A stretch of DNA of 63,669 nucleotides, counting the filler, from Klebsormidium nitens (taxonomy: Eukaryota > Plantae > Klebsormidiophyceae), in NCBI GenBank assembly GCA_000708835.1. It is 6 parts of 6 records of this genome, joined end to end, with 100 filler letters (N's around TTAATTAATTAA, not from the genome) between each part and the next. Parts side by side here need not be neighbours in the genome. Positions count along the whole stretch, not along the records: positions 48,698 to 61,061 come from DF238117.1; 5 more parts are not named here. One strand, written 5' to 3'. Shown one piece after another: positions 48,290 through 63,400 of the stretch. The notes beneath the pieces were generated by a model. The model searched no databases. It saw nothing but the letters and a program-made list of their open reading frames with translations, and had not been told where the DNA came from. The position numbers and the translations under genes were made by a program. Position 1 is the first letter of the stretch, and each line of letters opens with the position of its first letter.

Positions 48290-50607
48290 CTGGAGGCGAA
48301 CCTTGAACCCTACACGCGGTCGCTAGTCTGGCAAATCGTACGAAAATATGCAGGTAATCGAGGTAATACCACAGCATCAAAATTGCACGAGACACATAAA
48401 ATTCTTAACTTACAAAACATCCTGGTCTGAACACGTAACTATAGTAACCGTAACTGTAAGTGTGACTGTAACTGTGACTGTGAATTCAAGCATTCTTTTT
48501 ACATTAATAGGTACATCGGAACTGTCTCTTGGGCGTTTTCTGCTATGCACAAGCACTTTCATACGAGCTGCGGTGCACGGGAGTGCACCGCAGTGAANNN
48601 NNNNNNNNNNNNNNNNNNNNNNNNNNNNNNNNNNNNNNNNNTTAATTAATTAANNNNNNNNNNNNNNNNNNNNNNNNNNNNNNNNNNNNNNNNNNNNTCT
48701 ACTTTGCAGTCAGAAGTATGCTTGCATTGCTGGAAGGACGTTTGGGAAGTAGGGGCACTGCCCTGATCTGCCTCTCCATGATTCTTGACTGACTGAACGC
48801 AGGCAGAAACAAGACTCTGGAATTTTGAAGGACGTCCTGAGGGACTTGTCCAACAAGAGAACAGAAGTTGTCTTGAGCAGAAAGACAGCAATTTTTCTGA
48901 GCTGCGCCATCGCTTGAGAACGCCTGCTTTCATAGTTTCCGCACATGTTAGCTGATCGTGTGTAGTTATCCTGCCAGCTCTCTGCATATAGCTGGCCAAC
49001 CATCACATAACCACTTCCAACCAGCTGGTTTCATCTCATGCATTGAAAGGTGGTCAACAGTGACAACATGTTGAGCTACTGAAACTATGGCACAATTCAA
49101 CTAGCGGCTCGCACGTTACGGATCTCAATGTGGTGTGAAAGAGCTTTTCTAAGATTATCCAACTTTGAAGCTCCTATAAACTCGTTTAAGTTCCAGCCAT
49201 GGTTCCCTTCTGAAAGACTACCCACCTCTGCTCCTTGGGTCGCCATGCTGGTCTGATTGCGGGACCCTCCACAGCAAAAAGGCCCCACGGAGGAGCAGGT
49301 GATCGCGGTCGCCCCAGAAACTGCCCGCAACACAGAGGTAGTCAGCCAATGCTGCGTAGTACCAGTGGGCGAAGCCATAATAGCTCCGGTGATCGAAGAT
49401 GAGTTCAGGGCGCTGATGTGAAGGGGCTTGAACTGAGAACTAAACTTAGAAACTTGGGGAGATTGTCGACCAAGGGCTCCTTTGTGCAACGCAAATGCTG
49501 TGCACACGAAGCGCAAAGCCATGGAACGCCTATGACCGCATTGGGCCGCCAGAATAGGTCTTTTGGAATCCCTCTCCTTTCAATCATTCCAAGAAAGCGG
49601 AAACACCGTTGGCCTCGAAAGAGGCGCAGCTGCGATTCGATCCCCTTCCTCGACTCCCTTGCTAACTTGCAAGAAAGGCGTTCAAACCCTTGCTCGAAGC
49701 GGCTTTCAGCTTGATGAGGAGCTTTCGAGCTGCCAAACCCTGTGCATGTCAGGGCCCAGCTCGATGATTGCCACGCTTGACCATGGCGAAAAGACAGTGG
49801 GGTGACACGTGTGGGTCGAGCTTTCAATAAGGAGCGTCTCGACCGTCCGATACGCGTGGACAGGTGTATGAGACCGTCGATCGTACGTCTGCTTTTTGCA
49901 TGAGAGCGCGCGCCGGATTACAGGNNNNNNNNNNNNNNNNNNNNNNNNNNNNNNNNNNNNNNNNNNNNNNNNNNNNNNNNNNNNNNNNNNNNNNNNNNNN
50001 NNNNNNNNNNNNNNNNNNNNNNNNNNNNNNNNNNNNNNNNNNNNNNNNNNNNNNNNNNNNNNNNNNNNNNNNNNNNNNNNNNNNNNNNNNNNNNNNNNNN
50101 NNNNNNNNNNNNNNNNNNNNNNNNNNNNNNNNNNNNNNNNNNNNNNNNNNNNNNNNNNNNNNNNNNNNNNNNNNNNNNNNNNNNNNNNNNNNNNNNNNNN
50201 NNNNNNNNNNNNNNNNNNNNNNNNNNNNNNNNNNNNNNNNNNNNNNNNNNNNNNNNNNNNNNNNNNNNNNNNNNNNNNNNNNNNNNNNNNNNNNNNNNNN
50301 NNNNNNNNNNNNNNNNNNNNNNNNNNNNNNNNNNNNNNNNNNNNNNNNNNNNNNNNNNNNNNNNNNNNNNNNNNNNNNNNNNNNNNNNNNNNNNNNNNNN
50401 NNNNNNNNNNNNNNNNNNNNNNNNNNNNNNNNNNNNNNNNNNNNNNNNNNNNNNNNNNNNNNNNNNNNNNNNNNNNNNNNNNNNNNNNNNNNNNNNNNNN
50501 NNNNNNNNNNNNNNNNNNNNNNNNNNNNNNNNNNNNNNNNNNNNNNNNNNNNNNNNNNNNNNNNNNNNNNNNNCAATTTGTACATATGATTAGATAAATT
50601 TGCAAAC

Positions 50608-50790
50608 TTGGGCCCGGCGCCCCTCACATTGAAGTATGGGGGCCAAAGGGCCCCTCAACGATCCCCTTTGGGGGCCCGACGGGCCCCCTGGTCTCGGGCA
50701 TTGGGGGCCCGTTGGGCCCCCAAGCCTCTCGACTATTGGGGGACGATATTGGCCATTGGGGGCAATAATGGCTGGTGGCGGGCCCCCAGT
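50608..50790. repeat. GGGCCC/GGGGGCC-rich cluster next to a gap
   Basis: Many GGGCCC or GGCCCC motifs within about 180 bp. Confidence 0.5.
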
Positions 50791-50921
50791 GGAAACACTG
50801 ATACAAGCATAAAACTAACTATTATTTTTTCCCGACCGACCGACCCACCCAAAAGGGGGGTGGACCGGAAACCGGGAGTTAACTTCGACCCGCCTTAGAA
50901 CAGTGACAGTGACGCTGACAG

Positions 50922-51334
50922 AGGGGGGACAAGGAGAATGATTCTTTTAGCAACCCTGAGCCCGGGGGCTGTTGGAAGGTGCCTTTTGTGACTTGGAGTC
51001 AACTTTACCGGGGTCTGGGGGATCGCGTGTGTCAAAGTTCTCGGGTTGGAAAAACCTTCATCTATCTAACACACGGTAAGATGCATTGCCCCAGTAGATC
51101 CTCTCCGACTTCATATTGAAGTGCAGCTAAGACAAACCCGAAGCCTGACCCAAAACCATAAGGGCCGACGAGGAGCCAAGCACCGTTCGATGATAGGCAT
51201 CCCTACATCTGATGGTTACAAACCTGCCATCTGCACACGTGGATCTCTGGTCGAGCTGAAAGCGTCAGGAAAGGCACCTTCCAACAGCCCCCGGGCTCAG
51301 GGTTCCGAAAAGAACCATTCTCCTTGTCCACCCT
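50922..51334. mobile_element. MITE, 413 bp, with TIRs of about 65-70 bp, flanked by CTGACAG direct repeats
   Basis: Left AGGGGGGACAAGGAGAATGATTCTTTTAGCAACCCTGAGCCCGGGGGCTGTTGGAAGGTGCCTT is the near reverse complement of 51271-51334. CTGACAG lies at 50915-50921 and 51335-51341. Confidence 0.85.
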
Positions 51335-52022
51335 CTGACAGAACCCGTGGAAGGAGAACGTGGACTACAGTTTGCAGTCCCGGACCCCACACCGATCGGT
51401 ACTCGGTGCGCGCGCGGCCGACGTTGCGTGACGTCATTTATTGCCGCACTTGAAACCTCGGAAACCCTAGAATACAGTGCCGCCCGCGAATGCCCGCGAG
51501 CTGCATGAAAGTGTGCATGGTGCAGCTGTTCTTCTGGCTGCACACTGCGCACTGCACTGTTGCACAGCTGCAAAGTCCCTGCAAAGCTGCAATTTGCAAC
51601 TCAGAAAGCTTGCATCAGGTTCACAATGGTTCATTCGTAATGAAAGACGCAATCAGTGGAGCTGGCTCATGCGCCACTACTACTGATTGTACAATGGCAA
51701 CCTGCGATTTCTGAGAATGCATCTGCGCATGGAGAGGCAGGCGGCTGTTCAATGGGGTTTTGCAGGCGGAGCTTCTCTGAGCTCATTTGTCGGATGAGAT
51801 TAGCAGTTGCTGGAATATTGAACTGCTCATTGCTGGATACAGAACCGAAACGGACTTCATGTTGGCCTGCCAATGCCAGCCTGGAGGCCTGATCATGAGG
51901 GAATCATGAGAAGATGAGAACAACGTCGGTGATCAGCTCTCGAGTCTAGAACCTGATGCAGATACCAGAAGTTACGAAGGGAACGAATCAAGTTGCAGCT
52001 CAATTGTACTACTGAAGCTCAA

Positions 52023-55000
52023 ATGGAACAATCTGAAGCTCTTGATCGGTCTTCTTCTGATGACGAATTCGCTGAAAGGGCTCAGAACTATGTGGACCGG
52101 GTCAAGCTTTGGGGTGAACATGAAAGGGCAGCGATGGCTGAACGGTTGGAAAGGCACGAGCAGAACGAACCTGTGGTATCTTCGGCAGAGCTCCTTCCAA
52201 GAAATTCAAGCGCTCCTCTCTTTGCGGAGGGTCAGCTGCTGCTCCTACAAGGGCTCAGATCGAAGGGTTCGTCAAGAAAAGAAGCGATTCGAACAGGTGA
52301 CATCGAGAAGTTGAGGCAAATTTGGGAAGTTCTTGGCCGTTGGAGAATTGAGGAGCTCAACGGATCGGGTTGCCATGAGAAAATGGTCCACGAGCGAGCT
52401 GCAGAAACGCCTTCAACGTCTCAAAGTGTCGATCAAAACGGGAAAGCGCAATCGGTGCATCAAGATGGGAGGGCTAAGGTCGAAGAGTGCGACAGCAGAG
52501 TCGGCAGCATAAAATGCTCCCAATTAGTCCACTCTAATTCGGAGACGGAGGAAGAATCCGACGAAGAGGACGAGGACGAACCTGCAGATTGTGCTCGGGT
52601 TGAGGGGAGGTTGCGGCGGCCAACCAACGAGCCCGCCTCCAGTCAAAGACATATCGAACCCCCAGCTCAAGTGCTTAAACCGCTGATGTCATATCTGTTG
52701 CATCATCAGCGGACCTATCCAAACTTAGCTGCTATAGCTTCTAATGTCTGCCGGGACTGGAGGGCAGTGTATGAAGATGCATGCCAGGAGCTCCTCTTCG
52801 AAGACACCGACCTCCCGGCAGAAGGAGAGGACAATGAGGCATTCACCTCTGGCCGCCATGGCACGCCCTTCTCCCTCTATTGTCGGCAAGATTGCTCATG
52901 TCTGGTTTTGGCTGTTTCTCACGGCCAGGCACACCAGATCCACGCAGCTCACGAGCAAGCCCTTCAGCTGCAAAAACGGGAGGGTCCTTCGAAGGCCGAG
53001 GTCTGGCAACGAAAAGGGAACCGGAGAGTTGCCCCAAATGAACGCATCTCGTGCTCATCACCAGCGTTCGAGGACTTCGCAAAGTCCTTTGCTGCTACAC
53101 ACATGAAAGTAGGAGAAAAGATGCACGTACAACGGCCAGTCAAGCAGGAACCCGAGCGGGACGAAGAGCCTGACGTCGAGAGGACTGACGACGGGCCTGG
53201 GCTGTTGCTTTGTGTGCATGGAGGCAAGTTCCGTCTACTGGTTTTCCTAAGGTCGGCAACTGCCTCAACAGTGGCTTTGAGGTGCACATGCTGGCAAATG
53301 ATATTCTCAACAGTCCAAAGATCGAGAAGTAAGTGATTCAAAGCTGCCTCAGCTAAATTGCTTGTGCATTGCATCCTGCAGCCGCTCGCGTCCTCCACGT
53401 CGGCACCAACTTTTTTTACAAGAAGAGCGCCCGGAGCGGAACCTCCAGACTAGAAGACTGGGGGATTAAAGTGGTACCGAGCTTCGAAGAGCTGAGAGAC
53501 TGTTGCCGAGGGGCAAATAGAAAGTGTCGCAAGAAGCTCGATGTGACTGCTTTGAAGGGAGAAACGTGCTGCAAACGGAAAACGTCAAGTCAAAGCGGGG
53601 TGCTTGCGGATTCTCAAAGCTGCTCGAGGATTCCCCCGGCCTCCTTCGGGACTGGAATGAACAGTATCATGTCGAGCACGCCCACGGCCACAAAACGTCG
53701 CAGGTTCAGCTGGGAATCTTATCGGAGATGCGCAGCCGAGGCATGTGCCAAGCTTCAATGAAACTCGTCCTCCAAACTTCATTGAGTGGGAGACGGCTGC
53801 AAGCGGTCCGCGAAAAGACGCGTGCCGCTGGAAACAGCCATCGTACTTTCGCAACGTAAGATTTTCATTGCTCCCAATCCGATTCTAGTCATAGCTGATC
53901 TGATTGCACACAAAACACATAGACATGCCTTACATAGGTTGCGTGCATGCATGTGTAGGCCTGTGTTTTCTCACATATGCTGAATGGTAGCGGCACACTT
54001 TCATCATTTACAAAAAGGACATCCCATAAGTATACATAGGACAACCTTAATATGCAACGCCCTGAAATCTTTGAGAAGTCAATTGTTGCTTTGCAAAATG
54101 GCGCACGGCCACAAGGGACGCGCGCCGAAGAACAAGATTTCTCCCGAGACGAATGCACGTATCGTGCAATACGTCTGCGAAAACACACGAGCCTGTCCGG
54201 AAAAGAAGCGTCTACTCATTATCCAACAGGGATCCACCGGAAAGAAAGTAAGAAAGTAAGTAACATCTGACTCGAGCCATACTCCAACTTTATACTTTTC
54301 TTTTTAAGCCTGCCCTACTTCCATTCGAAGTTGCTGCTTGCAAGCGCCCCAAAGCGTCGAATCAATCGTCTTCGGTCTGCATGTGAATTCCAAAACCACG
54401 TGTTAGTCTTTCGACGATCGTCGTTTCTCGAGCAGGCGCTCCATCGCCGGATGGTTGCGGAACATCCCGAGCTGACCGTGGACTATCGAACGTTTAAGAG
54501 CATCATCAAAAGCAATCTTGATTACAGGTGAGGATTAAATTTGTGCGCAACGTGGTCCCTCCAACGAGCTGGATTTATGTATCAGTCCGATTGATTGAAT
54601 CTCGAGACAATAACCAGTACAGTAGTCAATCGCAGGTTTGTTTTGTTGACTTGCAGGATCGTCAGGAGCCGAAAGGACCACAACTTTTGCCCACACTGTC
54701 TCGACTTTGAGACAACGTTGACCGCAGTTGAGCGGGAGCTGAGAAGGTAAGAAGCACTCCCCTCGACGGCGACAGCTCTAGCTCGGATCAGAAATCGGAA
54801 AAGAATGACTGCATGCTCGAATGGGACATCCGATGACTACGGCAAGCTGCTGACGTCATCAGCAACAATCATAACGTCATTACATTTCCGCTTTTGATAG
54901 CGTTGGTGCGAAGAGCAAACAAGTCGGAACTGCCCCGCCGCATTGGATGACGCAGCGTTTGAGGACTCTCCAAAGCGAGCAAAAACGCTTGGAACAACAA

Positions 55001-58000
55001 TACGGGAAGCACGAAATGTGGTGGCGCTCGAGGCGACTATTCGCTAGAAGTGAGCTCACAAGTGACCAGCTTTGAAAAACTTTCGTCCTCCGGCATGTGT
55101 GTTCGTCCAAAGCCGCGGGTGCTCTGAGGTTTTACTAAGAAAGGGAGGGCACACAAGCAGACTGGATTCATACCTTCTTGTGTCTCCATGCAGCGCTAGA
55201 GGAAGTGGCGAAAGATCAGCTCCGTGCGCTTGGACAGACGTCGACGTCACACCCGTTCGCCAGCAGCGCCAGCAGTATGGTCTGCCAGGAGGATAAAAAA
55301 GGACTACTCAATCTGCCCATCTTCCAACGGGATCCAACAAGTGCACCTCTAGAAAAGACTGTGATCGAGCCACACGGGATCATAGACTGTCGGTCTCTGG
55401 AAGCTTGGTGAGTGTGTCGCGCTGCGCCTCTGCGTTTCTTCCAAAAGCTGCATTAATAATGAAACTACTTGCTATGTAAGCAGATTGCTTATTAAGCGGC
55501 GTTCTCGGTTTCAAAAGAGCGTTCAAATTCAATTTCTGCAATCGGCGCACAAATACTCTGCAGGGAAATCCTTATAAACAAAGGCCAGAACGTTGGGGGC
55601 GAAGCGTTCGTCGCAATCAACGTGCTACTGGCCTGGGCGCTGTCCAATTTGAATGGCGAAAAGGTGTTTGTCAACCTGCTCGACAACGCCTCGGACCTGC
55701 ACAACCGGTTCCGCTTCTGCTTACAGCAATTCCTTGTGGATCTGGGTGGGTCCCGCATTATTGGACGGCATTCAAAAACATCTCAGAACCGGCAGCTAAG
55801 AAAGTATTGAAGAAGGTCTTGTCAAGCATCCTTTGCGATTGCATGAAAGCGTGCAGAACGTTCGGATGGCAGGCGTTTGGCGTCCAGCAGAAGCATACAC
55901 AAGTAGATCGTGAGTAAAAGTTATCATGCAGGTGTTGTCGAGCGAGCGGCGGTCGTTTACCTGCCCGCACACCACGCGAAGCACTTCATGGACGCCGGTA
56001 AGTTGTCCGACCCGTTCTTTTCAAGGACTGCTTGAAACTTCCTCGTCCGCTAAACATACGAAGCATTCCAAACTGCAGAGGCAATAGAATGAATGTGAGG
56101 CTTGTTCAAGACGGTCCAATTCAACATAACGCCGGCTTCGTCTCGGTCCAACCAACATTCACCATCCTGTACAGTACATGGCTACCTGGAGATAGCTTCA
56201 AGGACGACGGACATCTTTTCGCGTGACAACCTCGCCGCCTTGTGCTCAAGCCTTCCCCGGGTCCACGGCACATGCGCAAACCCCGAGCTCTTCGAGAACC
56301 TCAACGACTTTTTCAGGAACCACTACAACTCGGCCAGCATGCCAAACATCAAAGCGCACGCCCTTGTAGTCGCCTCGAAGGAGCTTAACGGGGTTGTCCT
56401 GCTCAAAGAGAATCCGGAGGACAACGCATGGAAGAGTTGGCAGATGCGGCCGATGAATGCGAGTTCCGGACTCAAACGTGAAGACCTGGACTCGATGAAG
56501 ACGGTTGGCCAGCAGACGCCGTTGAGCGCAGTCGTGTCTACTCTCGAGAAGTTGGGTCCGAACTGCGAAAAGATGCGGCACGAAAGCGGGTTCTCCGGGA
56601 TGCAGGTCACGCTTCCCGAGCGCCTGGACCTCACCTCTTTCGAAGCGCGCTCCCCGGGGTCCATTCTCCGCCCAGCAGTGCGAACCGGATGGAGGCCTGG
56701 GAGGTTGCAGCCTTTCATAGGTGCCCCCGCGAGCGCGTTGAAACGGTCCCTGCGGAGAATGCAGAAACCCTGTTGCTCCAGCCGCAAGAGAGTCTGAGGT
56801 TCTCTTCTGCTCGCTTTCACGGCCTATTGGAGCTCCGCAACGATGCGTCCGCCAGCAAATCGCTGAAGTCGGTGTTCGAAAGCGTGTTGGAGATCCCAAA
56901 ATTCAAAGTCGCAGTTGTTGCGAGCGGACAAGAAGCGTTCAGCCCGGAGGCGTTCATCAAGGAAAGCCGCTCTCCGTTTGCAGTTTTCGCTTGCCAGATT
57001 CTTGACGTGAATCAGAGCCTGCTCGAGGGGCACACGGTTATTCCCCTCCAAAAGCGAGCAGCAAAAGAGGCGCCGGCCTTAAGCCCAACTCGCCAGCAAA
57101 CAAAGGAACTTGCTCACATGAAAGTCGTGGGTCTGTTCTCACCGGACGTCGACGAGCTCCGGGAGTGGGCGGCCGCATGGGGCTGCCGAGAGGAAGACGT
57201 TCTGGACTGGTTCCTGGGCCGTCGAGGGAAGGCGGTCGACGAAGAGGGCCCCCCGCCCAAGAAGGCCAGGATGCCAAAGAAGAGTGCGCTTGCAGCGGCG
57301 GCGCCTGCGGTCAAGAGGGAGAGGAGGCTGGAACATGAGCAAAACGGAGTGGAAAGGGCAGGGGAAGGGAGCGGAGGAGGCGACGAAGAGGACAAAGAGG
57401 AAGCGAGGCAAGGAGCGGAACGGAGCGGAACGGCGGACGGAACGGAACGGAACGGAACGGAATGGCGCGGTGATTGGGCCGCAAGCGAGCGGTCTAGGGC
57501 ACATCGCGGAGATGGACGTGCAACAGAAGGGAGCGCCCGGGAGTGAAAGAGAAAACGGAGCAGGATTGGGAGGCGAAGCAGAAGAAAGGTTGAGAAAAGG
57601 AACAGAACCGAGGGGAGAATGGGAAGGCGGGGACAGCGCCGTAAAGATTGAGCAGATTCGTGAGACTAGAGAGGAACCCAAAGACAAGACGGAGGGGCTG
57701 GCGCCGCAGTCAGGGTTGAGGGCGGGACAGGGAAAGGTCCCAAAACCGCTCTGCGCAAACACCTCTCCGCAGGCGTCAAAAACGGAGAGAAAGCGGCCGG
57801 CGGCAGATGCAAAGACGGCTGCCGCGACCAAGCGGATGCGAGCCCAAGCTGCTGCATACAAGGCGAGCATGCAGGCGGACTCGAGCATCCTGGACCCGAC
57901 CTGGTTCTCCGACCAGCAGCGATTGTCGGGTGACCAGTTGTCCAACGTTTTCTCGACTCTGTACATAAACCCCCCGGCAGACCTAGCGCCCATTCCCACG

Positions 58001-59639
58001 TTCACAAACGAGCATCTCGCTATGAAGCTGATTGAAATCTCAAACGGAAGCAGAGCGTGGCCCTCGAAAATCGTTCAGAAAGTGAAGGAGATGAACGGTT
58101 GTGCAGTCTTTGTGGTCGGGGACTGCTCTCATTGGAGGTCGGTTTTTCTAGATGGGCGAAGCAAAACCGTCTTCCTGTTTGACCCCTACTTCGAGAAGGC
58201 GTTTGGAGGCGGCGGCCTCGAAGAGGCTCTAAACAGAGCATTCAGCCAGAGCGAAGGCTGGGGACATGACCGGATCAAGCTACGGTTGCAATCCAACGAC
58301 TTCCAATGCGGTGTGTCGGCAGCCTTTTTCCAGGAGCAGGTCCTCCAATTCGTTTGGAGAGGGGAGGCGGAGGGCTACGTTCAAAGGTTCACTGAGTTCT
58401 TCCTGCGGGAGGTGCAGGCCGAAGGGCTCCGGCCACTTCCTTACGGCAAGGCGCCTTCTAAAAACCAGAGCCTGCCAAACAAAGAATTCATCCAGAAGAA
58501 AAGGACAGCCCTAAGAAGTCTCCTGGAGAACCGCAAGGAGTTTCTACCCCTACAGCCAGGCGGCGCACAGCCGCGCCCGCAACCCGTAGCAGAAAGACCC
58601 GAAAGCTCCGCCCCGGCTGCGCCTCCAACTGCCTCGCAGCCCTTTCCTCGAACAAGTTTGAAGAGCAGCGAACAAAAGGGGAAACTTCCTAAGAGCGCTT
58701 ACCAGGAGCCTGCTCATCCTCGGGATAGTGCCCTCCCCACAACCGAATGCAAACAACAGGGGACTCTTCCAGAACTAGGTGGGGCACAATCCGGATTTGA
58801 CGAGGGGTCTCCTCCGGCGCCAGGTCCAAGTCACGCGACACCTGCGACAGCGAAAGGGAGCTGCAAGGGATCAAAGGAGGACAACAAGGTACTATATGAG
58901 ACTTGGCTTCCGTTTTTCATTCCTGCCTGTAGGTGCCAACCCTAGGGCCGTCGATCTCAGCAAATGCTCGTTCTACACCACCGGAGTGTATCAGATCCCT
59001 GAACCCTCGATCTCAGCAAATGCTTGAACTACACCACCACAGTGTTCAGATATTTGACCCCTCCAGAACCTGATTGTTAAGACGAATTGCAGGGTGCAAA
59101 CGTCTAGACCCACTTGTTGATGCAGTTTGGCAAACCAAAGAAGGCTACCAACGCTGAGTTGAACGTCAAAGGCGCAAAGAACGCCTTCAACTATTTTCAA
59201 CAGCTTCTGAAAGAAGTAAGGACTGAGCAGCATGTCTTTGAGTTTGAAACGGAGCAACTGAACGATGCTCTGTGTTACTGCCGCAGTTCGCTGCTTCGTT
59301 CAAGTTGATCATCAATCTTGTACAATCAGACAATCAATTCAAATTTTCGCTAAATCCAGTATCACCCCTGCAATGCAGACTGCGGAAAGGATGTTATTAG
59401 CCGACATTGCCACAGATCTCCCCATCGGACAAGCAGAGAGGGCAGCCCTGCTGGATGCATCGACCGCCACTACCAAACCCAACACCGCTGTGTGCTCTGT
59501 AGCTTGGCGTCATGCTCCCGCAGAGATAAAACAGAAATGCACAGACCTTGCGCTAGTTGACCGAGAGCGGGCTCAGAAAGACCGGGCAAGTGCACTCGCT
59601 CTGATCAGTGGCGCGCAGGACATTGAACCAGAGACGTAA
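52023..59639 (+). CDS. Multi-exon F-box-like, Sola-type transposase, Ulp1/C48 protease and HMG-box protein; about 3 frameshifts
   Basis: Phase-consistent exons: to 53223 (GC donor), 53382-53855, 54076-54247, 54436-54527, 54657-54746, 54901-55049, 55194-55407, 55564-55745, 55932-55997, 56175-58888, 59126-59215, 59379-59639. Motifs: ASNVCRDWRAV (F-box-like); HGHKGRAPKN, HNFCPHC, QEDKKGLLNLP, LLDNAS, PAHHAKHFMDAVHG (transposase, candidate D-D-D); SHWRSVFLD..FLFDP..QSNDFQCG (Ulp1); KNAFNYF..AWRHAPAEIKQKCTDLALVDRER (HMG). Confidence 0.75.
57408..57465. repeat. (GGAAC)n/(GGAGC)n pentanucleotide microsatellite inside the transposon ORF
   Basis: GGAGCGGAACGGAGCGGAACGGCGGACGGAACGGAACGGAACGGAACGGAATGG, located in the overlap of ORFs 56689-57546 and 57284-58945. 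Confidence 0.9.
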
Positions 59640-60370
59640 CCCCGCTGACTTGGCAGGGACTGTTGCTTTGGCTGATGACCTCACCTTCATGTGATGCCAT
59701 TGTCTTGCACATCCTGTAGCTGACGCCAGAATGCATCCGTTCCGGGACCTCGACAGAACCCCTCATTGAATGCATGTTGAAGGATCACAATGAAGTTGCT
59801 GGAATTGCATCGTGCCTTGCATTTCTACATGCAAGCTGCGGAAAGAGCTGTAGGCATTCTCGACAAGCCTATGCTGTGATGTTCTTGGTCAGGAGCTGCG
59901 CTTTACTACCAACTGCCAGCTGTCCCCTACAGCGTTTGAAAGCGAGCTGGTCATATTTCCTTTCTAAGCAGAGCCCGCTGATAGCCGCAGCGCCGCCGCC
60001 TGCAACTGCCTCAGCCTGCCCACCCGTGCCTTCCTAGAACGTTCATACATCCGTCCTTTCAACTGAAACTTCTCCCTGTACAGAAATGAAGCATCTTCCT
60101 CGATGGCAATGTGGATAACTGGGCTCCATGCTGAGCCCAAAGCAGCTTCAGAAGAGCCGCCAAAGTGTAATGGCGGCTCTGCAGTGTCCTGGCTCCTTCC
60201 CTATGCAGCTTCTCTGGCTTGCAAAGTTGCAGCTGTAGCTGGCAAAGGAGTGCGCACTGCGGAACGCGGCCGCATCGATGAGTCACAGGCGGTGCCGCGC
60301 GCGCACCAAGTACCGATCGGTGTGGGGTCCGGGACTGCAAACTGTAGTCCACGTTCTCCTTCCACGGGTT

Positions 60371-60406
60371 CTGACAGTGACATTGACAGTGACAGTGACA
60401 GTGACC
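60371..60406. repeat. (GACAGT)n hexamer tract, right part of the insertion target
   Basis: CTGACAGTGACATTGACAGTGACAGTGACAGTGAC. The left part, CAGTGACAGTGACG, is at 50901-50914. Confidence 0.9.
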
Positions 60407-63400
60407 GGGGCTCTCAGGTGAGCTTAGGGTTCTGTTGCAAACCTGTAACGGTTTGTGGCAATCGACTAGCGTTGTGTTAGGGTTAAGTAATTTCCCAGTG
60501 ACATTAGGGTTACTCACTGACAGTGACAACCGGGCAGAGTACTTTTGGTTTAGTGTATGTAGCCACTTCCTCTGACCCGGTGCCCATCTGTACCGGAGGC
60601 CGTACCGCAAACTGTACGGTAAATCTGACAACTCTGATCCGGAGTTCTGATCAAAGGACCTGGAGAGGGTTCACATTGGACTTTCGATCAACTTTTGCTT
60701 TGTTTTGAGATGTACCCAGATGACGTGTGGTGACGTTGTAGCAGCGAGAACTGAAGTTGGGTTCACATTGGGAAAACCGCTGTCGAATGCATCATCAGTT
60801 CCGGCGGAGACCACGTGCGATCACGTGGATGTACAGAATGGTACATAACCAACTTACAGCCTTTCGGGTCCGCCGGATCTGAGCCCTCAGATTCGCAAAG
60901 CGACCCAAAAGATGCATCCTGAGCCGTTCATTCTTTTAGAATTTCATTTTTCGATTTACCGGGCCGAAAAAGGAAAGATGGAACTTCGGACACCCTGCGG
61001 ACAGGAAGAAGATGACCAGGATGACTTGCTTCAGAGAGCAACATTTGGGAGCTATTTTGTGNNNNNNNNNNNNNNNNNNNNNNNNNNNNNNNNNNNNNNN
61101 NNNNNTTAATTAATTAANNNNNNNNNNNNNNNNNNNNNNNNNNNNNNNNNNNNNNNNNNNNAGACTCCTTGACTGAATATGGAGCCTCTTCGTGAGTCCT
61201 AACTAATCAGTCTTTGGGAGGGAAGGCAAGAAGACGCAATTTTTCTGAGAGGCGCTCTTGCTGAGGTGATCCCAAGGCGTGCTGAAAAGCTTCGCATGGT
61301 TTCCGCACATGTGAAGTAGACAGGCAGCGTGTAAACCCTGTCCAACCGTCACACCCTCACGAGCTACCTCAAAGGGGGTTCTCAGGCGTTTTTCACCTCA
61401 CGTCTATTAAGCGCCGCCGCCCATACGTCGCACCATTTACACCTGAAAATGTCAACACCAACAGTTGGCAAAGCAGCGAAGGCCTTCCGCCCATCTGCTT
61501 CCGCCGCCGCGGGTGCTTGATCCCCTCCGCGAGCGCGCGCGCGGCCGCCTCCTCGGTTCTCCGAGGAGAATCAATCCTCCTGCCCAGCTACTACTTGTAT
61601 TTGATTGTTCTTTACGTTTTGACTTGAATTGAAATTGGAGTATAACGTACTATAGGCCCCTGTTTCTCTGTGGCGTTGGCAAAGATCCCTGGGCAGCCCT
61701 CGAAGTCGCTCCTGGACCTCAACAGCCGTCGGTGGATTCCTTGCTTGAATCCATTTCTGCTGATGTATCTGGGTATATCGAAGTCATGTTTCGAAGTTCC
61801 TCAAATTAAGCAAGGTTCTTCACTGCCAAGATCTCACGTGAGTCCACTTCGTTCGCGTGACTAAAAGCCGGGGCGGTTGTTTTGCCAAAATGAATCTGAG
61901 TCTGGAAGGAACGATCTCTCTTAGATCCAGATTTGGGGCCAATCAGCGGGGCGAAGCCTACGCGAAGCTGAGTTACGCAGATTCTCTCCCCCAAAAATGC
62001 ACCACATTCATTGTTCTCGCTGGTACTATTCCGGTCGTTCTGAAAGCCGCGCCGCTAGACTAGGTTGCCTCTGATGTGCGCGTGTGCATGCGCCCCGGCT
62101 CGTTTGCCCATTACGAGCGAACGTGCGTCCGCACGAAAAAGCCAAGCCTTCTGCAAGACTAAGGCGGCCTGCTAGGTGCCAGCATTAAGCTGAGGAGCGG
62201 GCAGCTCTGAGCGCGTTGCCGTTGTCTGCTGAGGACTGCGGTAATTGCCACGTGGCCTTGATAGTTATGCCTGTAAGACGTCCGGGACGCCTTATCCCGG
62301 AACGTCCAACTACGGTCCGTGTCTCGCCCGGACGCACCCGCCGAGCCGGCCGCGCAAGCGGCCGCGGAACCGCGACCAAGTACCACGCTCCGAGTCGCGC
62401 GCGGTGCTTTGCGCGGGCGCGCGAGCGGTTCTAGAGCTCGCCGATAAACAAATCTGCCGCTGAAAATTGAAGACCTTCTCAAAAGCGCGCGCGCGGCTTG
62501 GCTAGTGGGTCGCGCGCCCAGCTCGGAAAGCGTAAGGTCTGTGCGAGCTTCTCATTCTGCATGTGTTGATTTTATATTCGTGATATTTAAAGTGAAGCGA
62601 GTGTACTTGAGCGGGCAAGGAGGATACAACCGGTGACATGTAGTGGGGGCGTCCCATCTATCCCTACCGCTCCGCTTGCGCACGGTCCGAAGCCGCATTA
62701 GATACACTGCGCATGACTTTCTTTCCTTGGTTTCGCTTCGTTTCGTCATCTCAAGCGATAAAGTGTCTTCCCAGCTTCTAGTGTACGTTTGTTTAACCAT
62801 AATAAAGGTAGGCGTGTGTGCGGATCGAGCATACGAGTTTGTCGGAACCCTAAGTCAAATCCGGTAAATGTTTAGGCTCGAGCGGCAGCTTGTGATTTGA
62901 AGGCACAGATGATTGCCTACACGTTAACGTTGGAGTGCAGGGATGCCTCTCTATGGCCACAATTAATAACTGGAAGGGTTGAAGAAAGCCTGGGGCTTTT
63001 ATAGTGAAGACTTGGGTCATCGTGGCCAAACTTTTACTGAAGCAAGATGCGTTCGACAACGGCCTTAAAGCCGTGAAGCATCAAAGTTTCGGTTGTCCGC
63101 ATACCTACACGCTCGTTAGGCAATATGATCTCGCACTACTTGCTTCAGTTGCGCTAGCCTGAGGTCGTTATTGGGCGCTCCAACGGAGCGGCCGGCCGAA
63201 AAAAGCCTTTGAATATTTGTTTTAGAACCAAAATGTTGAAGACCTTATGTCGAAGATTGAGATCACTCGTAATTGGAGATCGATTATGAGATTCTGATCA
63301 GCATTGATCCAGTATGGTTGCTCCTCGGTGAGCCTCTGGTGCCGCTCTGAGGTGGATATGGAAGGTTTAAGGTCCTTTTGAGGGAGCCGTCGAGTTACCG

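What the first reader, a model, noticed from the sequence alone, without database searches (positions are those of the whole stretch)
50901..60406. Target-site-specific stacking: MITE and autonomous element share one CTGACAG site in a (GACAGT)n microsatellite
Seen: the order is CAGTGACAGTGACG-CTGACAG-[MITE]-CTGACAG-[9-kb element]-CTGACAG-TGACATTGACAGTGACAGTGACAGTGAC. Removing both elements restores one hexamer tract. Because the site is nearly palindromic, the TSD could be read as 7 bp (CTGACAG), 5 bp (TGACA, with G...C termini) or 3 bp. None of these matches the 4-bp Sola norm. Known: microsatellite targeting occurs in Dada transposons and some non-LTR elements. Inference: a safe-harbour-targeting cut-and-paste family.
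Basis: partly seen in the sequence, partly recalled or inferred. Interest (0 to 1): 0.75.

Follow-up and report, generated by a model that had tools for sequence, protein, structure and literature searches.

The report
Two transposons stacked in one heptamer
In a small scaffold of the green alga Klebsormidium nitens, a 9-kb Sola-like cut-and-paste transposon and an unrelated 413-bp miniature element sit side by side in exactly the same 7-base palindrome, CTGACAG. This points to sequence-specific insertion with a duplication length that does not fit the 4 bases known for Sola, but it rests on a single locus.

Summary
The order is CTGACAG (50915-21), a 413-bp MITE, CTGACAG (51335-41), a 9,029-bp TIR element, CTGACAG (60371-77). 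Removing both elements restores a 63-nt, phase-perfect GACAGT tract.

The piece is a whole 12,364-bp scaffold of Klebsormidium nitens. The large element encodes:
- a multi-exon DDD transposase (D268/D346/D387 of public model GAQ92852.1). Its only clear full-length relative is a Coccomyxa protein (31% over 348 aa, E 8e-43). Its three catalytic blocks resemble published Sola1/Sola3 blocks, and it gives sub-threshold DUF7869 hits.
- a Ulp1-like cysteine protease motif.

The MITE shares no internal sequence with it. All four ends carry AAGGAGAA at positions 10-17, and that octamer occurs nowhere else in the window. The two elements are probably moved by the same or a related transposase.

Both elements hit the only NTGACAG unit of the tract that forms the palindrome CTG-N-CAG. 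I read this as specificity for the heptamer, not for the microsatellite. "Safe harbour" is unsupported.

With symmetric ends the duplication must be 7, 5, 3 or 1 bp, so the 4-bp Sola rule fails. No other copy could be fetched, so family-wide specificity is untested.

The parts
50899..50914 (.). Left part of the GACAGT hexamer tract (AACAGTGACAGTGACG)
50915..50921 (.). CTGACAG copy 1, left flank of the MITE
50922..51334 (.). 413-bp non-autonomous element (MITE). TIRs are 50922-50986 and 51270-51334 (65 nt, 4 mismatches). No coding capacity and no internal similarity to the 9-kb element.
51335..51341 (.). CTGACAG copy 2, shared by the MITE's right end and the large element's left end
51342..60370 (+). 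9,029-bp TIR DNA transposon; all coding is on the + strand
51342..51418 (.). Left TIR of the large element, 77 nt
60294..60370 (.). Right TIR of the large element, 77 nt, one mismatch at position 63
50931..50938 (+). AAGGAGAA at positions 10-17 of the MITE's left end. The same octamer lies at 51318-51325 (-), 51351-51358 (+) and 60354-60361 (-), always at positions 10-17 from an element end. Candidate transposase-binding motif.
   Evidence: 4 matches, expected 0.67, 0 of 100 shuffles reach 4
51957..53333 (+). ORF1 (459 codons between stops), acidic, no family match; function unknown
54098..54247 (+). My exon A, MAHGHKGRAPKNKISPETNARIVQYV..., a candidate N-terminal helix-turn-helix. It is not part of the public gene model.
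   Evidence: read by eye; HTH_32, E 0.097, weak
54658..56479 (+). Transposase core exons (GT-AG introns). CxxC at 54688-54699, D268 codon 55292-55294, D346 codon 55682-55684 (LLDNASDLHN), D387 codon 55991-55993 (PAHHAKHFMDA).
57857..58489 (+). Ulp1-like (CE-clan) cysteine protease motif region. H981 codon 58130-58132, D998 codon 58181-58183, C1040 codon 58307-58309.
   Evidence: ChlaDub2, E 0.2; UniRef name 'Ubiquitin-like protease family profile domain-containing protein'. No Pfam hit; structure model too poor to use.
60371..60377 (.). CTGACAG copy 3, right flank of the large element
60378..60405 (.). Right part of the hexamer tract (TGACATTGACAGTGACAGTGACAGTGAC)
60517..60523 (.). Fourth CTGACAG, unoccupied, inside a short second GACAGT patch

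Best explanation
A 9-kb autonomous-looking cut-and-paste DNA transposon of Klebsormidium nitens and a 413-bp non-autonomous element have each integrated into the same palindromic heptamer, CTG-A-CAG. The large element has 77-nt TIRs. It encodes a DDD RNase-H-like transposase with Sola-type catalytic blocks, preceded by a CxxC motif and probably a helix-turn-helix. The public gene model joins this transposase to a Ulp1-like protease. [quoted passage not shown] It is therefore probably bound and moved by the same or a closely related transposase. Inferred mechanism: a two-fold symmetric transpososome recognises CTG-N-CAG and makes a staggered cut of odd length centred on the middle base. Each insertion regenerates the heptamer on both sides, so a later insertion can land in one copy. 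That produces n+1 heptamers for n stacked elements. The GACAGT tract is involved only because one variant unit (ACGCTG) happens to create the palindrome. Shown here: the anatomy, the shared octamer, the homology to the Coccomyxa protein, and the conserved D/D/D positions. Inferred: Sola affiliation (motif level only), cross-mobilisation, symmetric recognition, and family-wide specificity.
For: - Anatomy and restoration of the tract in phase.
- Only 4 CTGACAG in the window, three of them at the junctions.
- Of five NTGACAG units in the restored tract, only the occupied one is palindromic.
- AAGGAGAA occurs 4 times, all at positions 10-17 of the four ends, with 0 of 100 shuffles reaching 4.
- The MITE has no other similarity to the large element.
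- The transposase is real and conserved. Exon F gives P0002 (the locus's own model, 97%), P0001 (84%, with similarity ending at my predicted exon border), Coccomyxa P0003 and P0005.
- P0002 versus P0003 is 31% over 348 aa, E 8e-43, with D-78/79-D-41-D/N spacing conserved.
- DUF7869 is the only Pfam hit of P0002, P0003 and P0005 (E 0.047, 0.0011 and 0.025), always over the same core. The protein atlas gave the same lead.
- The three blocks match published Sola blocks (PMC3985635, supplementary file 5). QEDKKGLLNLP resembles Sola1 FDLEKVLTTP. LLDNASDLHNRF resembles Sola3 SDNASSYHGNF and Sola1 SDNCGGQNRNRF. YLPAHHAKH resembles Sola1 FLERGHTQS.
- Size and TIR length lie within the reported Sola range of 2-9 kb and 11-1124 bp.
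Against: - This is one locus only, so there is no logo of flanking sequence and no empty allele.
- The Sola assignment is by eye against a published alignment plus sub-threshold Pfam hits. There is no statistical alignment to a Sola protein.
- Known Sola1 and Sola2 elements make 4-bp AT-rich AWWT duplications. This site is neither 4 bp nor AT-rich.
- Read with a 7-bp duplication, the two elements share almost nothing at their extreme tips (AACCCGTGG versus AGGGGGGAC). That is unusual for elements cut by one enzyme. It suggests the true tips may include G, AG or CAG of the heptamer, giving a duplication of 5, 3 or 1 bp.
- The Coccomyxa homologue has N at the third acidic position.
- No second full-length copy was found among annotated proteins, so recent activity of a 'family' is not shown.
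Confidence: 0.55

Rival explanations
1. One reading: the family targets the (GACAGT)n microsatellite as a safe harbour, as MuTAnT, Micron and TAFT do with (TA)n.
For: Both insertions lie inside a hexamer tract, and the tract is restored in phase. Microsatellite targeting by DNA transposons is documented for (TA)n.
Against: Both elements used the single palindromic variant unit and none of the four ordinary units. A second GACAGT patch containing CTGACAG at 60517-60523 is empty. The tract is only about 50 bp. The restored site looks exon-like, so it is not obviously 'safe'. No second locus was available.
Confidence: 0.15
2. End-directed or local insertion. The second element was drawn to the junction of the resident element, for example by transposase bound to the resident TIR or by local hopping. 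On this view there is no real DNA-sequence specificity for the heptamer.
For: Both elements carry the same putative binding octamer, so a transposase bound at one end could recruit the other. Only one locus is available.
Against: This would need precision to the base, duplicating exactly the same 7-mer. It does not explain why the first insertion chose the only palindromic unit, although that alone has a chance of about 1 in 5.
Confidence: 0.15
3. The heptamer, or part of it, belongs to the element ends, and the true duplication is short: 3 bp GAC with AG...CT tips, or 5 bp TGACA with G...C tips. On this view the target requirement is much looser.
For: The heptamer is palindromic and extends both TIRs (I1 84 nt, I2 78 nt). 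With shorter duplications the two elements gain shared tips (GA, AGA or CAGA), which one enzyme cutting both would be expected to need.
Against: This concerns where the cut lies and does not exclude the main explanation. The leftmost C (50915) and rightmost G (60377) are host bases in every reading, so the host site already held the full palindrome.
Confidence: 0.1
4. The hexamer tract is a product of the elements, not a target. Repeated insertion and excision at one site left footprints (duplication plus one terminal base, TGACA+G) that built up (TGACAG)n.
For: With a 5-bp duplication and G...C tips, a footprint unit would be exactly TGACAG. This is arithmetic only.
Against: No evidence of excision. 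A separate GACAGT patch lies 120 bp away with no element. Ordinary replication slippage explains hexamer tracts more simply.
Confidence: 0.04

Closest known systems
Sola superfamily (Sola1, Sola2, Sola3; Bao et al. 2009, as summarised in PMC10741241, PMC3845634 and PMC3627910; core alignments in PMC3985635)
   Same: A DDD-type RNase-H-like transposase whose three blocks resemble published Sola1 and Sola3 blocks. TIR element of 9 kb with 77-nt TIRs, inside the reported ranges. Multi-exon gene. Sola occurs in the green lineage (Physcomitrella reported).
   Different: Sola is defined by 4-bp duplications, AT-rich AWWT in Sola1 and Sola2. Here the site is CTGACAG, and symmetric ends allow only 7, 5, 3 or 1 bp. 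The transposase mixes Sola1-like and Sola3-like features, and its only significant full-length relative is a Coccomyxa protein. The gene model is fused to a Ulp1-like protease.
Dada superfamily (PMC3706591)
   Same: Duplications of 6-7 bp, strict re-use of one site, and different families inserted in tandem separated by a single copy of the duplication (Dada-U1A/U1B, Fig. S3). Elements of 4.7-11 kb with many introns.
   Different: Dada has no TIRs, only short subterminal repeats. It targets U6, U1 and tRNA genes; Rfam finds none here. It has a DDE triad with a DxxH motif and CCCC/CCHC fingers. None of this element's core motif strings occurs in the Dada protein dataset.
MuTAnT, Micron and TAFT: microsatellite-targeting DNA transposons (PMC4486113)
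   Same: DNA transposons and MITEs found inside a microsatellite, with the 'safe haven' argument.
   Different: Those families target (TA)n, are supported by hundreds of copies, and make 9-bp duplications (MULE). Here there is one locus, one variant unit of a hexamer tract, and a different transposase.
Transposons carrying Ulp1-like proteases (for example KI-MULEs and Ginger1; from my own knowledge, not checked here)
   Same: A CE-clan cysteine protease motif (H...D...Q..C) encoded inside a DNA transposon.
   Different: The transposase type differs. Here the protease is supported only by motif, a weak PDB match and the UniRef name.

Membership tests
Sola superfamily | DDD transposase with Sola-type RNase-H-like core blocks | tested here: inconclusive
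   D268/D346/D387 with spacing 78 and 41. The blocks resemble Sola1 and Sola3 blocks from PMC3985635 supplementary file 5, but only by eye. Pfam DUF7869 hits are below the cut-off. No statistical alignment to a Sola protein was possible without typing sequences in.
Sola superfamily | 4-bp target site duplication | tested here: not met
   The flanks are CTGACAG. With symmetric ends only 7, 5, 3 or 1 bp are possible. A 4-bp reading needs ends offset by 3 nt in both elements plus a coincidental host C at 50915.
Sola superfamily | AT-rich AWWT target (Sola1, Sola2) | tested here: not met
   The site is CTGACAG. AWWT is reported in PMC3845634 and PMC3627910.
Sola superfamily | TIRs of 11-1124 bp and length of about 2-9 kb | tested here: met
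   77-nt TIRs and 9,029 bp. Ranges are from PMC10741241.
Dada superfamily | No TIRs; short subterminal inverted repeats | tested here: not met
   77-nt and 65-nt TIRs.
Dada superfamily | Insertion into multicopy small RNA genes | tested here: not met
   Rfam at gathering threshold finds nothing in 48698-61061.
Dada superfamily | 6-7-bp duplication | tested here: inconclusive
   7 bp is one of four admissible readings.
Dada superfamily | Dada-type DDE transposase with a DxxH motif | tested here: inconclusive
   Only a string search of Dada Dataset S1 for this element's motifs, which was negative. No alignment was made.
Microsatellite-targeting DNA transposons (MuTAnT type) | Most copies of the family lie in the same microsatellite | not testable with these tools
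No eukaryotic genome collection was on hand.
MITE (non-autonomous TIR element) | Short, with TIRs, flanked by a duplication, no coding capacity | tested here: met
   413 bp, 65-nt TIRs, CTGACAG on both sides, and no ORF confined to the element.
MITE (non-autonomous TIR element) | Multiple copies, mobilised by a cognate transposase | not testable with these tools
   Only the shared AAGGAGAA octamer at the same offset hints at a cognate enzyme.
Peptidase C48 / Ulp1 (CE clan) | His-Asp-Cys triad in order, with an oxyanion Gln before the Cys | tested here: inconclusive
   The motifs HWRSV, LFDPY and QSNDFQCG are present. PDB ChlaDub2 match at E 0.2. UniRef names a ULP profile domain. Pfam is silent. 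The AF2 model has pLDDT 42 and was not searched.

The most novel reading that the evidence does not exclude
This is the first glimpse of a separate green-algal branch of the Sola superfamily (Klebsormidium and Coccomyxa). Its transpososome would recognise the GC-containing palindrome CTG-N-CAG and make an odd-length, possibly 7-bp, staggered cut instead of the 4-bp AWWT cut that defines Sola. It would be specific enough that unrelated elements sharing only an 8-bp binding motif pile up in one heptamer. It would also carry a Ulp1-like protease.
Probability: 0.3. Interest if true: 0.6.

Novelty: new variant of a known kind. Interest (0 to 1): 0.45.

Why it matters
Duplication length and target preference are treated as fixed, diagnostic characters of DNA-transposon superfamilies. 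A Sola-type enzyme that cuts with a different stagger at a GC-containing palindrome would show that this character can shift within a superfamily. It would also offer a natural pair for studying how a DDD transposase selects its target: an autonomous element and a MITE that share only an 8-bp motif. Strict 7-bp specificity in a cut-and-paste element is rare; Dada is the main precedent. The lineage is also very sparsely sampled: a search of 1.84 billion representative proteins with the exon holding the second catalytic Asp (exon F) returned 5 matches. The value is limited for now, because everything about targeting rests on one locus in a 12-kb unplaced scaffold.

Tried and rejected
- **Pfam on all long ORFs and on six-frame pieces of the multi-exon region** gave nothing usable.
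- **Word-index protein search with the protease ORF** gave no hits. With P0002 residues 155-520 it returned only the protein itself.
- **TIR scans.** Viral contigs gave none. Metagenome contigs gave 7 matches, all chance 20-mers in unrelated sequence (L001-L007).
- **Viral contigs with the protein alignment** gave no relatives.
- **Other protein libraries.** NCBIfam and PDB sequence searches with single proteins and with a profile found no transposase match. The protein atlas gave only low-score leads.
- **Structure.** The AF2 model of the protease region had pLDDT 42 and was not passed to a fold search.
- **Dinoflagellate host** was considered and rejected: no spliced-leader relic, and the organism was then identified.
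- **MITE as a deletion derivative of the 9-kb element** was rejected.
- **Degraded TIR remnants in the flanks** were not found above shuffle level.
- **Literature searches** for DUF7869/PF25273 and for Klebsormidium transposons found nothing relevant. Bao et al. 2009 is not held.
- **Joining exons.** Searches used single exons by reference, or the public model P0002 returned by a tool.
Full report
**Observation.**

The finding is accurate to the base. From left to right the piece reads:
- AACAGTGACAGTGACG
- CTGACAG (50915-50921)
- a 413-bp element (50922-51334)
- CTGACAG (51335-51341)
- a 9,029-bp element (51342-60370)
- CTGACAG (60371-60377)
- TGACATTGACAGTGACAGTGACAGTGAC (60378-60405)

The repeat finder recovers both inverted-repeat pairs. 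Without the heptamer, the large element has 77-nt TIRs with one mismatch. The small element has 65-nt TIRs with four mismatches.

Removing both elements and two of the three heptamers restores a hexamer tract in unbroken phase. CTGACAG occurs only four times in the window: the three junction copies and one unoccupied copy at 60517-60523. Three copies for two elements is what a second insertion into the duplication left by the first would produce.

**Where it comes from.**

The 104-residue reading frame around one exon (55496-55807) was searched against 1.84 billion representative proteins. It returned five proteins. The best, P0002, is GAQ92852.1 / KFL_011680010 of Klebsormidium nitens. It sits on a single contig of 12,364 bases, which is the exact length of this piece. 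The piece is therefore a whole small scaffold of this charophyte alga. tblastn maps P0002 back onto 52090-59636 in about eleven blocks, so it is the public gene model of this locus.

**What the large element encodes.**

All long frames are on the + strand. Between 54.1 and 56.5 kb I read a series of short exons with GT-AG borders. Searches used single exons by reference, or the public model P0002.

Three results support the exon structure:
- P0002 uses the same exons C to F and H.
- A fragment from a Logan assembly, P0001, is 84% identical across exon F. Similarity stops exactly at my predicted donor site.
- A Coccomyxa subellipsoidea protein, P0003 (XP_005642587.1), aligns with P0002 over 348 residues at 31% identity, E 8e-43.

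The conserved core runs: RxDHN[FY]CxxC ... D(KK)x5LP ... KGQN ... LNGExVxVxxLDNAxDxHN ... VDxGVVER ... LPAxHAKH. The candidate catalytic residues are D268, D346 and D387, with spacing 78 and 41. Coccomyxa has spacing 79 and 41, with N at the third position.

An upstream exon that the public model omits (54098-54247) looks like a helix-turn-helix. The support is weak: HTH_32 at E 0.097.

**Which superfamily.**

- No Pfam family passes its cut-off. DUF7869 is the only hit of P0002, P0003 and P0005 (E 0.047, 0.0011 and 0.025), always over the same core. The protein atlas gave the same lead.
- The published RNase-H-like alignment of Majorek et al. (PMC3985635, supplementary file 5) gives the Sola core blocks:
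  - Sola1-1_AP: FDLEKVLTTP / YSDNCGGQNRNRF / FLERGHTQS
  - Sola3-1_HM: KDYCQKVLP / SDNASSYHGNF / YDYNEPCRGKD
  - Sola2-1_HM: GDFAENYT / FTDGCAGQYKN / FFATSHG
  - This protein: QEDKKGLLNLP / LLDNASDLHNRF / YLPAHHAKHFMD
- The first and third blocks look like Sola1. The second looks like Sola3.
- Size and TIR length fit the Sola ranges.
- This is a motif-level match read by eye, not a statistical test. I rate Sola affiliation as likely, at about 0.7, possibly as a separate branch.
- Dada is a poor fit. Dada has no TIRs, inserts in small RNA genes and has a DDE-DxxH transposase. Here Rfam finds no RNA gene. None of this protein's motif strings occurs in the Dada dataset.

**The protease.**

Downstream in the same gene model lies HWRSV...LFDPY...QSNDFQCG, which has the order and spacing of a Ulp1-like (CE-clan) protease.
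- For it: a weak PDB match to ChlaDub2 at E 0.2 and the UniRef name [quoted passage not shown].
- Against it: Pfam is silent. A single-sequence AF2 model had pLDDT 42 and was not used further.

**The small element.**

It has no similarity to the inside of the large element and no coding capacity. Its TIRs differ from the large element's except for one feature. AAGGAGAA lies at positions 10-17 from all four ends, and those four are the only occurrences in the window. The expected count is 0.67, and 0 of 100 shuffles reach 4. This is best read as a shared transposase-binding site. The two elements then probably answer to the same or closely related enzymes.

**Target.**

The restored tract holds five NTGACAG units, with N = G, C, T, G, G. 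Both insertions used the only unit that completes the palindrome CTG-N-CAG. That unit exists because of the variant repeat ACGCTG. I therefore read the specificity as being for the heptamer palindrome, not for the microsatellite.

A symmetric transpososome on an odd palindrome implies an odd stagger of 7, 5, 3 or 1 bp. A 4-bp duplication would need ends offset by 3 nt in both elements, plus a coincidental host C at 50915.

The length cannot be settled from this locus, because every reading gives the same sequence. One argument against 7 bp is that the two elements would then share almost nothing at their tips (AACCCGTGG versus AGGGGGGAC). Shorter duplications give them common tips (GA, AGA or CAGA).

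Known Sola1 and Sola2 duplications are 4-bp AWWT. On any symmetric reading this element departs from the rule.

**What is not supported.**

- The safe-harbour idea is inference only. A 7-mer recurs thousands of times in a genome of about 100 Mb.
- The restored site reads as a 63-nt in-frame segment, NSDSDADSDIDSDSDSDRGSQ. It is bounded by an AG at 50897-50898 and CAG|GTGAGC at 60415-60423. It could be a disrupted exon, although no gene is annotated there.
The real precedents for microsatellite targeting by DNA transposons are MuTAnT, Micron and TAFT in (TA)n.
- The Dada paper does describe the same stacking pattern: two families in tandem separated by one duplication copy.

**Limits.**

- No other copy of either element could be fetched. 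TIR scans of viral contigs found nothing, and the metagenome scan found only chance 20-mers.
- No second full-length copy appears among annotated proteins.
- The claim of family-wide specificity therefore rests on two insertions at one site. The alternative that the resident element's end attracted the second insertion cannot be excluded.

**Verdict.**

The anatomy, the non-4-bp duplication and the Sola likeness hold. Microsatellite targeting and a safe harbour are not supported. This is most likely a new variant of a known kind: a Sola-like green-algal lineage with a GC-containing palindromic target and an odd-length duplication. Interest is moderate.

Noticed in passing
window 50899-50921 + 60378-60417 (restored empty site): Without the two elements, the tract is a 63-nt in-frame segment encoding NSDSDADSDIDSDSDSDRGSQ. 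It is preceded by an AG at 50897-50898 and followed by CAG|GTGAGC at 60415-60423. It may be a small Asp/Ser-rich exon split by the insertions. No gene is annotated there.
   Followed up: partly
window 60425-60510: Three copies of TTAGGGTT (telomere-like) lie within about 90 bp, between the hexamer tract and a second short GACAGT patch at 60515-60528. The two patches end alike: GACAGTGACCGGGGC and GACAGTGACAACCGGGC.
   Followed up: no
window 50668-50772: GGGGCCC-rich palindromic tandem repeats (33-nt unit, 2.2 copies; then a 19-nt unit) lie just after the assembly gap at 49925-50573. Their nature is unknown.
   Followed up: no
window 52090-59636 (P0002 = GAQ92852.1): The public gene model looks chimeric. 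Its N-terminus comes from an alternative frame inside ORF1. It skips the HTH-like exon at 54098-54247. It runs the transposase, a low-complexity linker, the Ulp1-like region and a C-terminal piece at 59376-59636 into one 1,319-aa protein.
   Followed up: partly
window 57412-57462: A (GGAAC)n pentamer repeat of about 11 copies lies inside the coding region between the transposase and the protease. It is translated as ERNG-type repeats in the gene model.
   Followed up: no
P0003 (Coccomyxa subellipsoidea XP_005642587.1), residue 824: The Coccomyxa homologue has Asn where K. nitens has the third candidate catalytic Asp (HMANA versus HFMDA). Either that copy is inactive or the third acidic residue lies elsewhere.
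   Followed up: partly
P0001 (Logan, 77 aa) and P0005/P0008/P0009 (ENA, JGI, Logan; 85 aa): Short fragments of the same transposase family turn up in environmental and raw-read assemblies, at 84% and about 40% identity over exon F. The lineage exists outside the K. nitens reference, but it is very rare in public data.
   Followed up: partly
window 51362-51385 and mirror in the right TIR: The large element's TIR contains an internal near-palindrome, GGACTACAGTTTGCAGTCC. It includes ACAGT, which is reminiscent of the target unit. No significance was tested.
   Followed up: no
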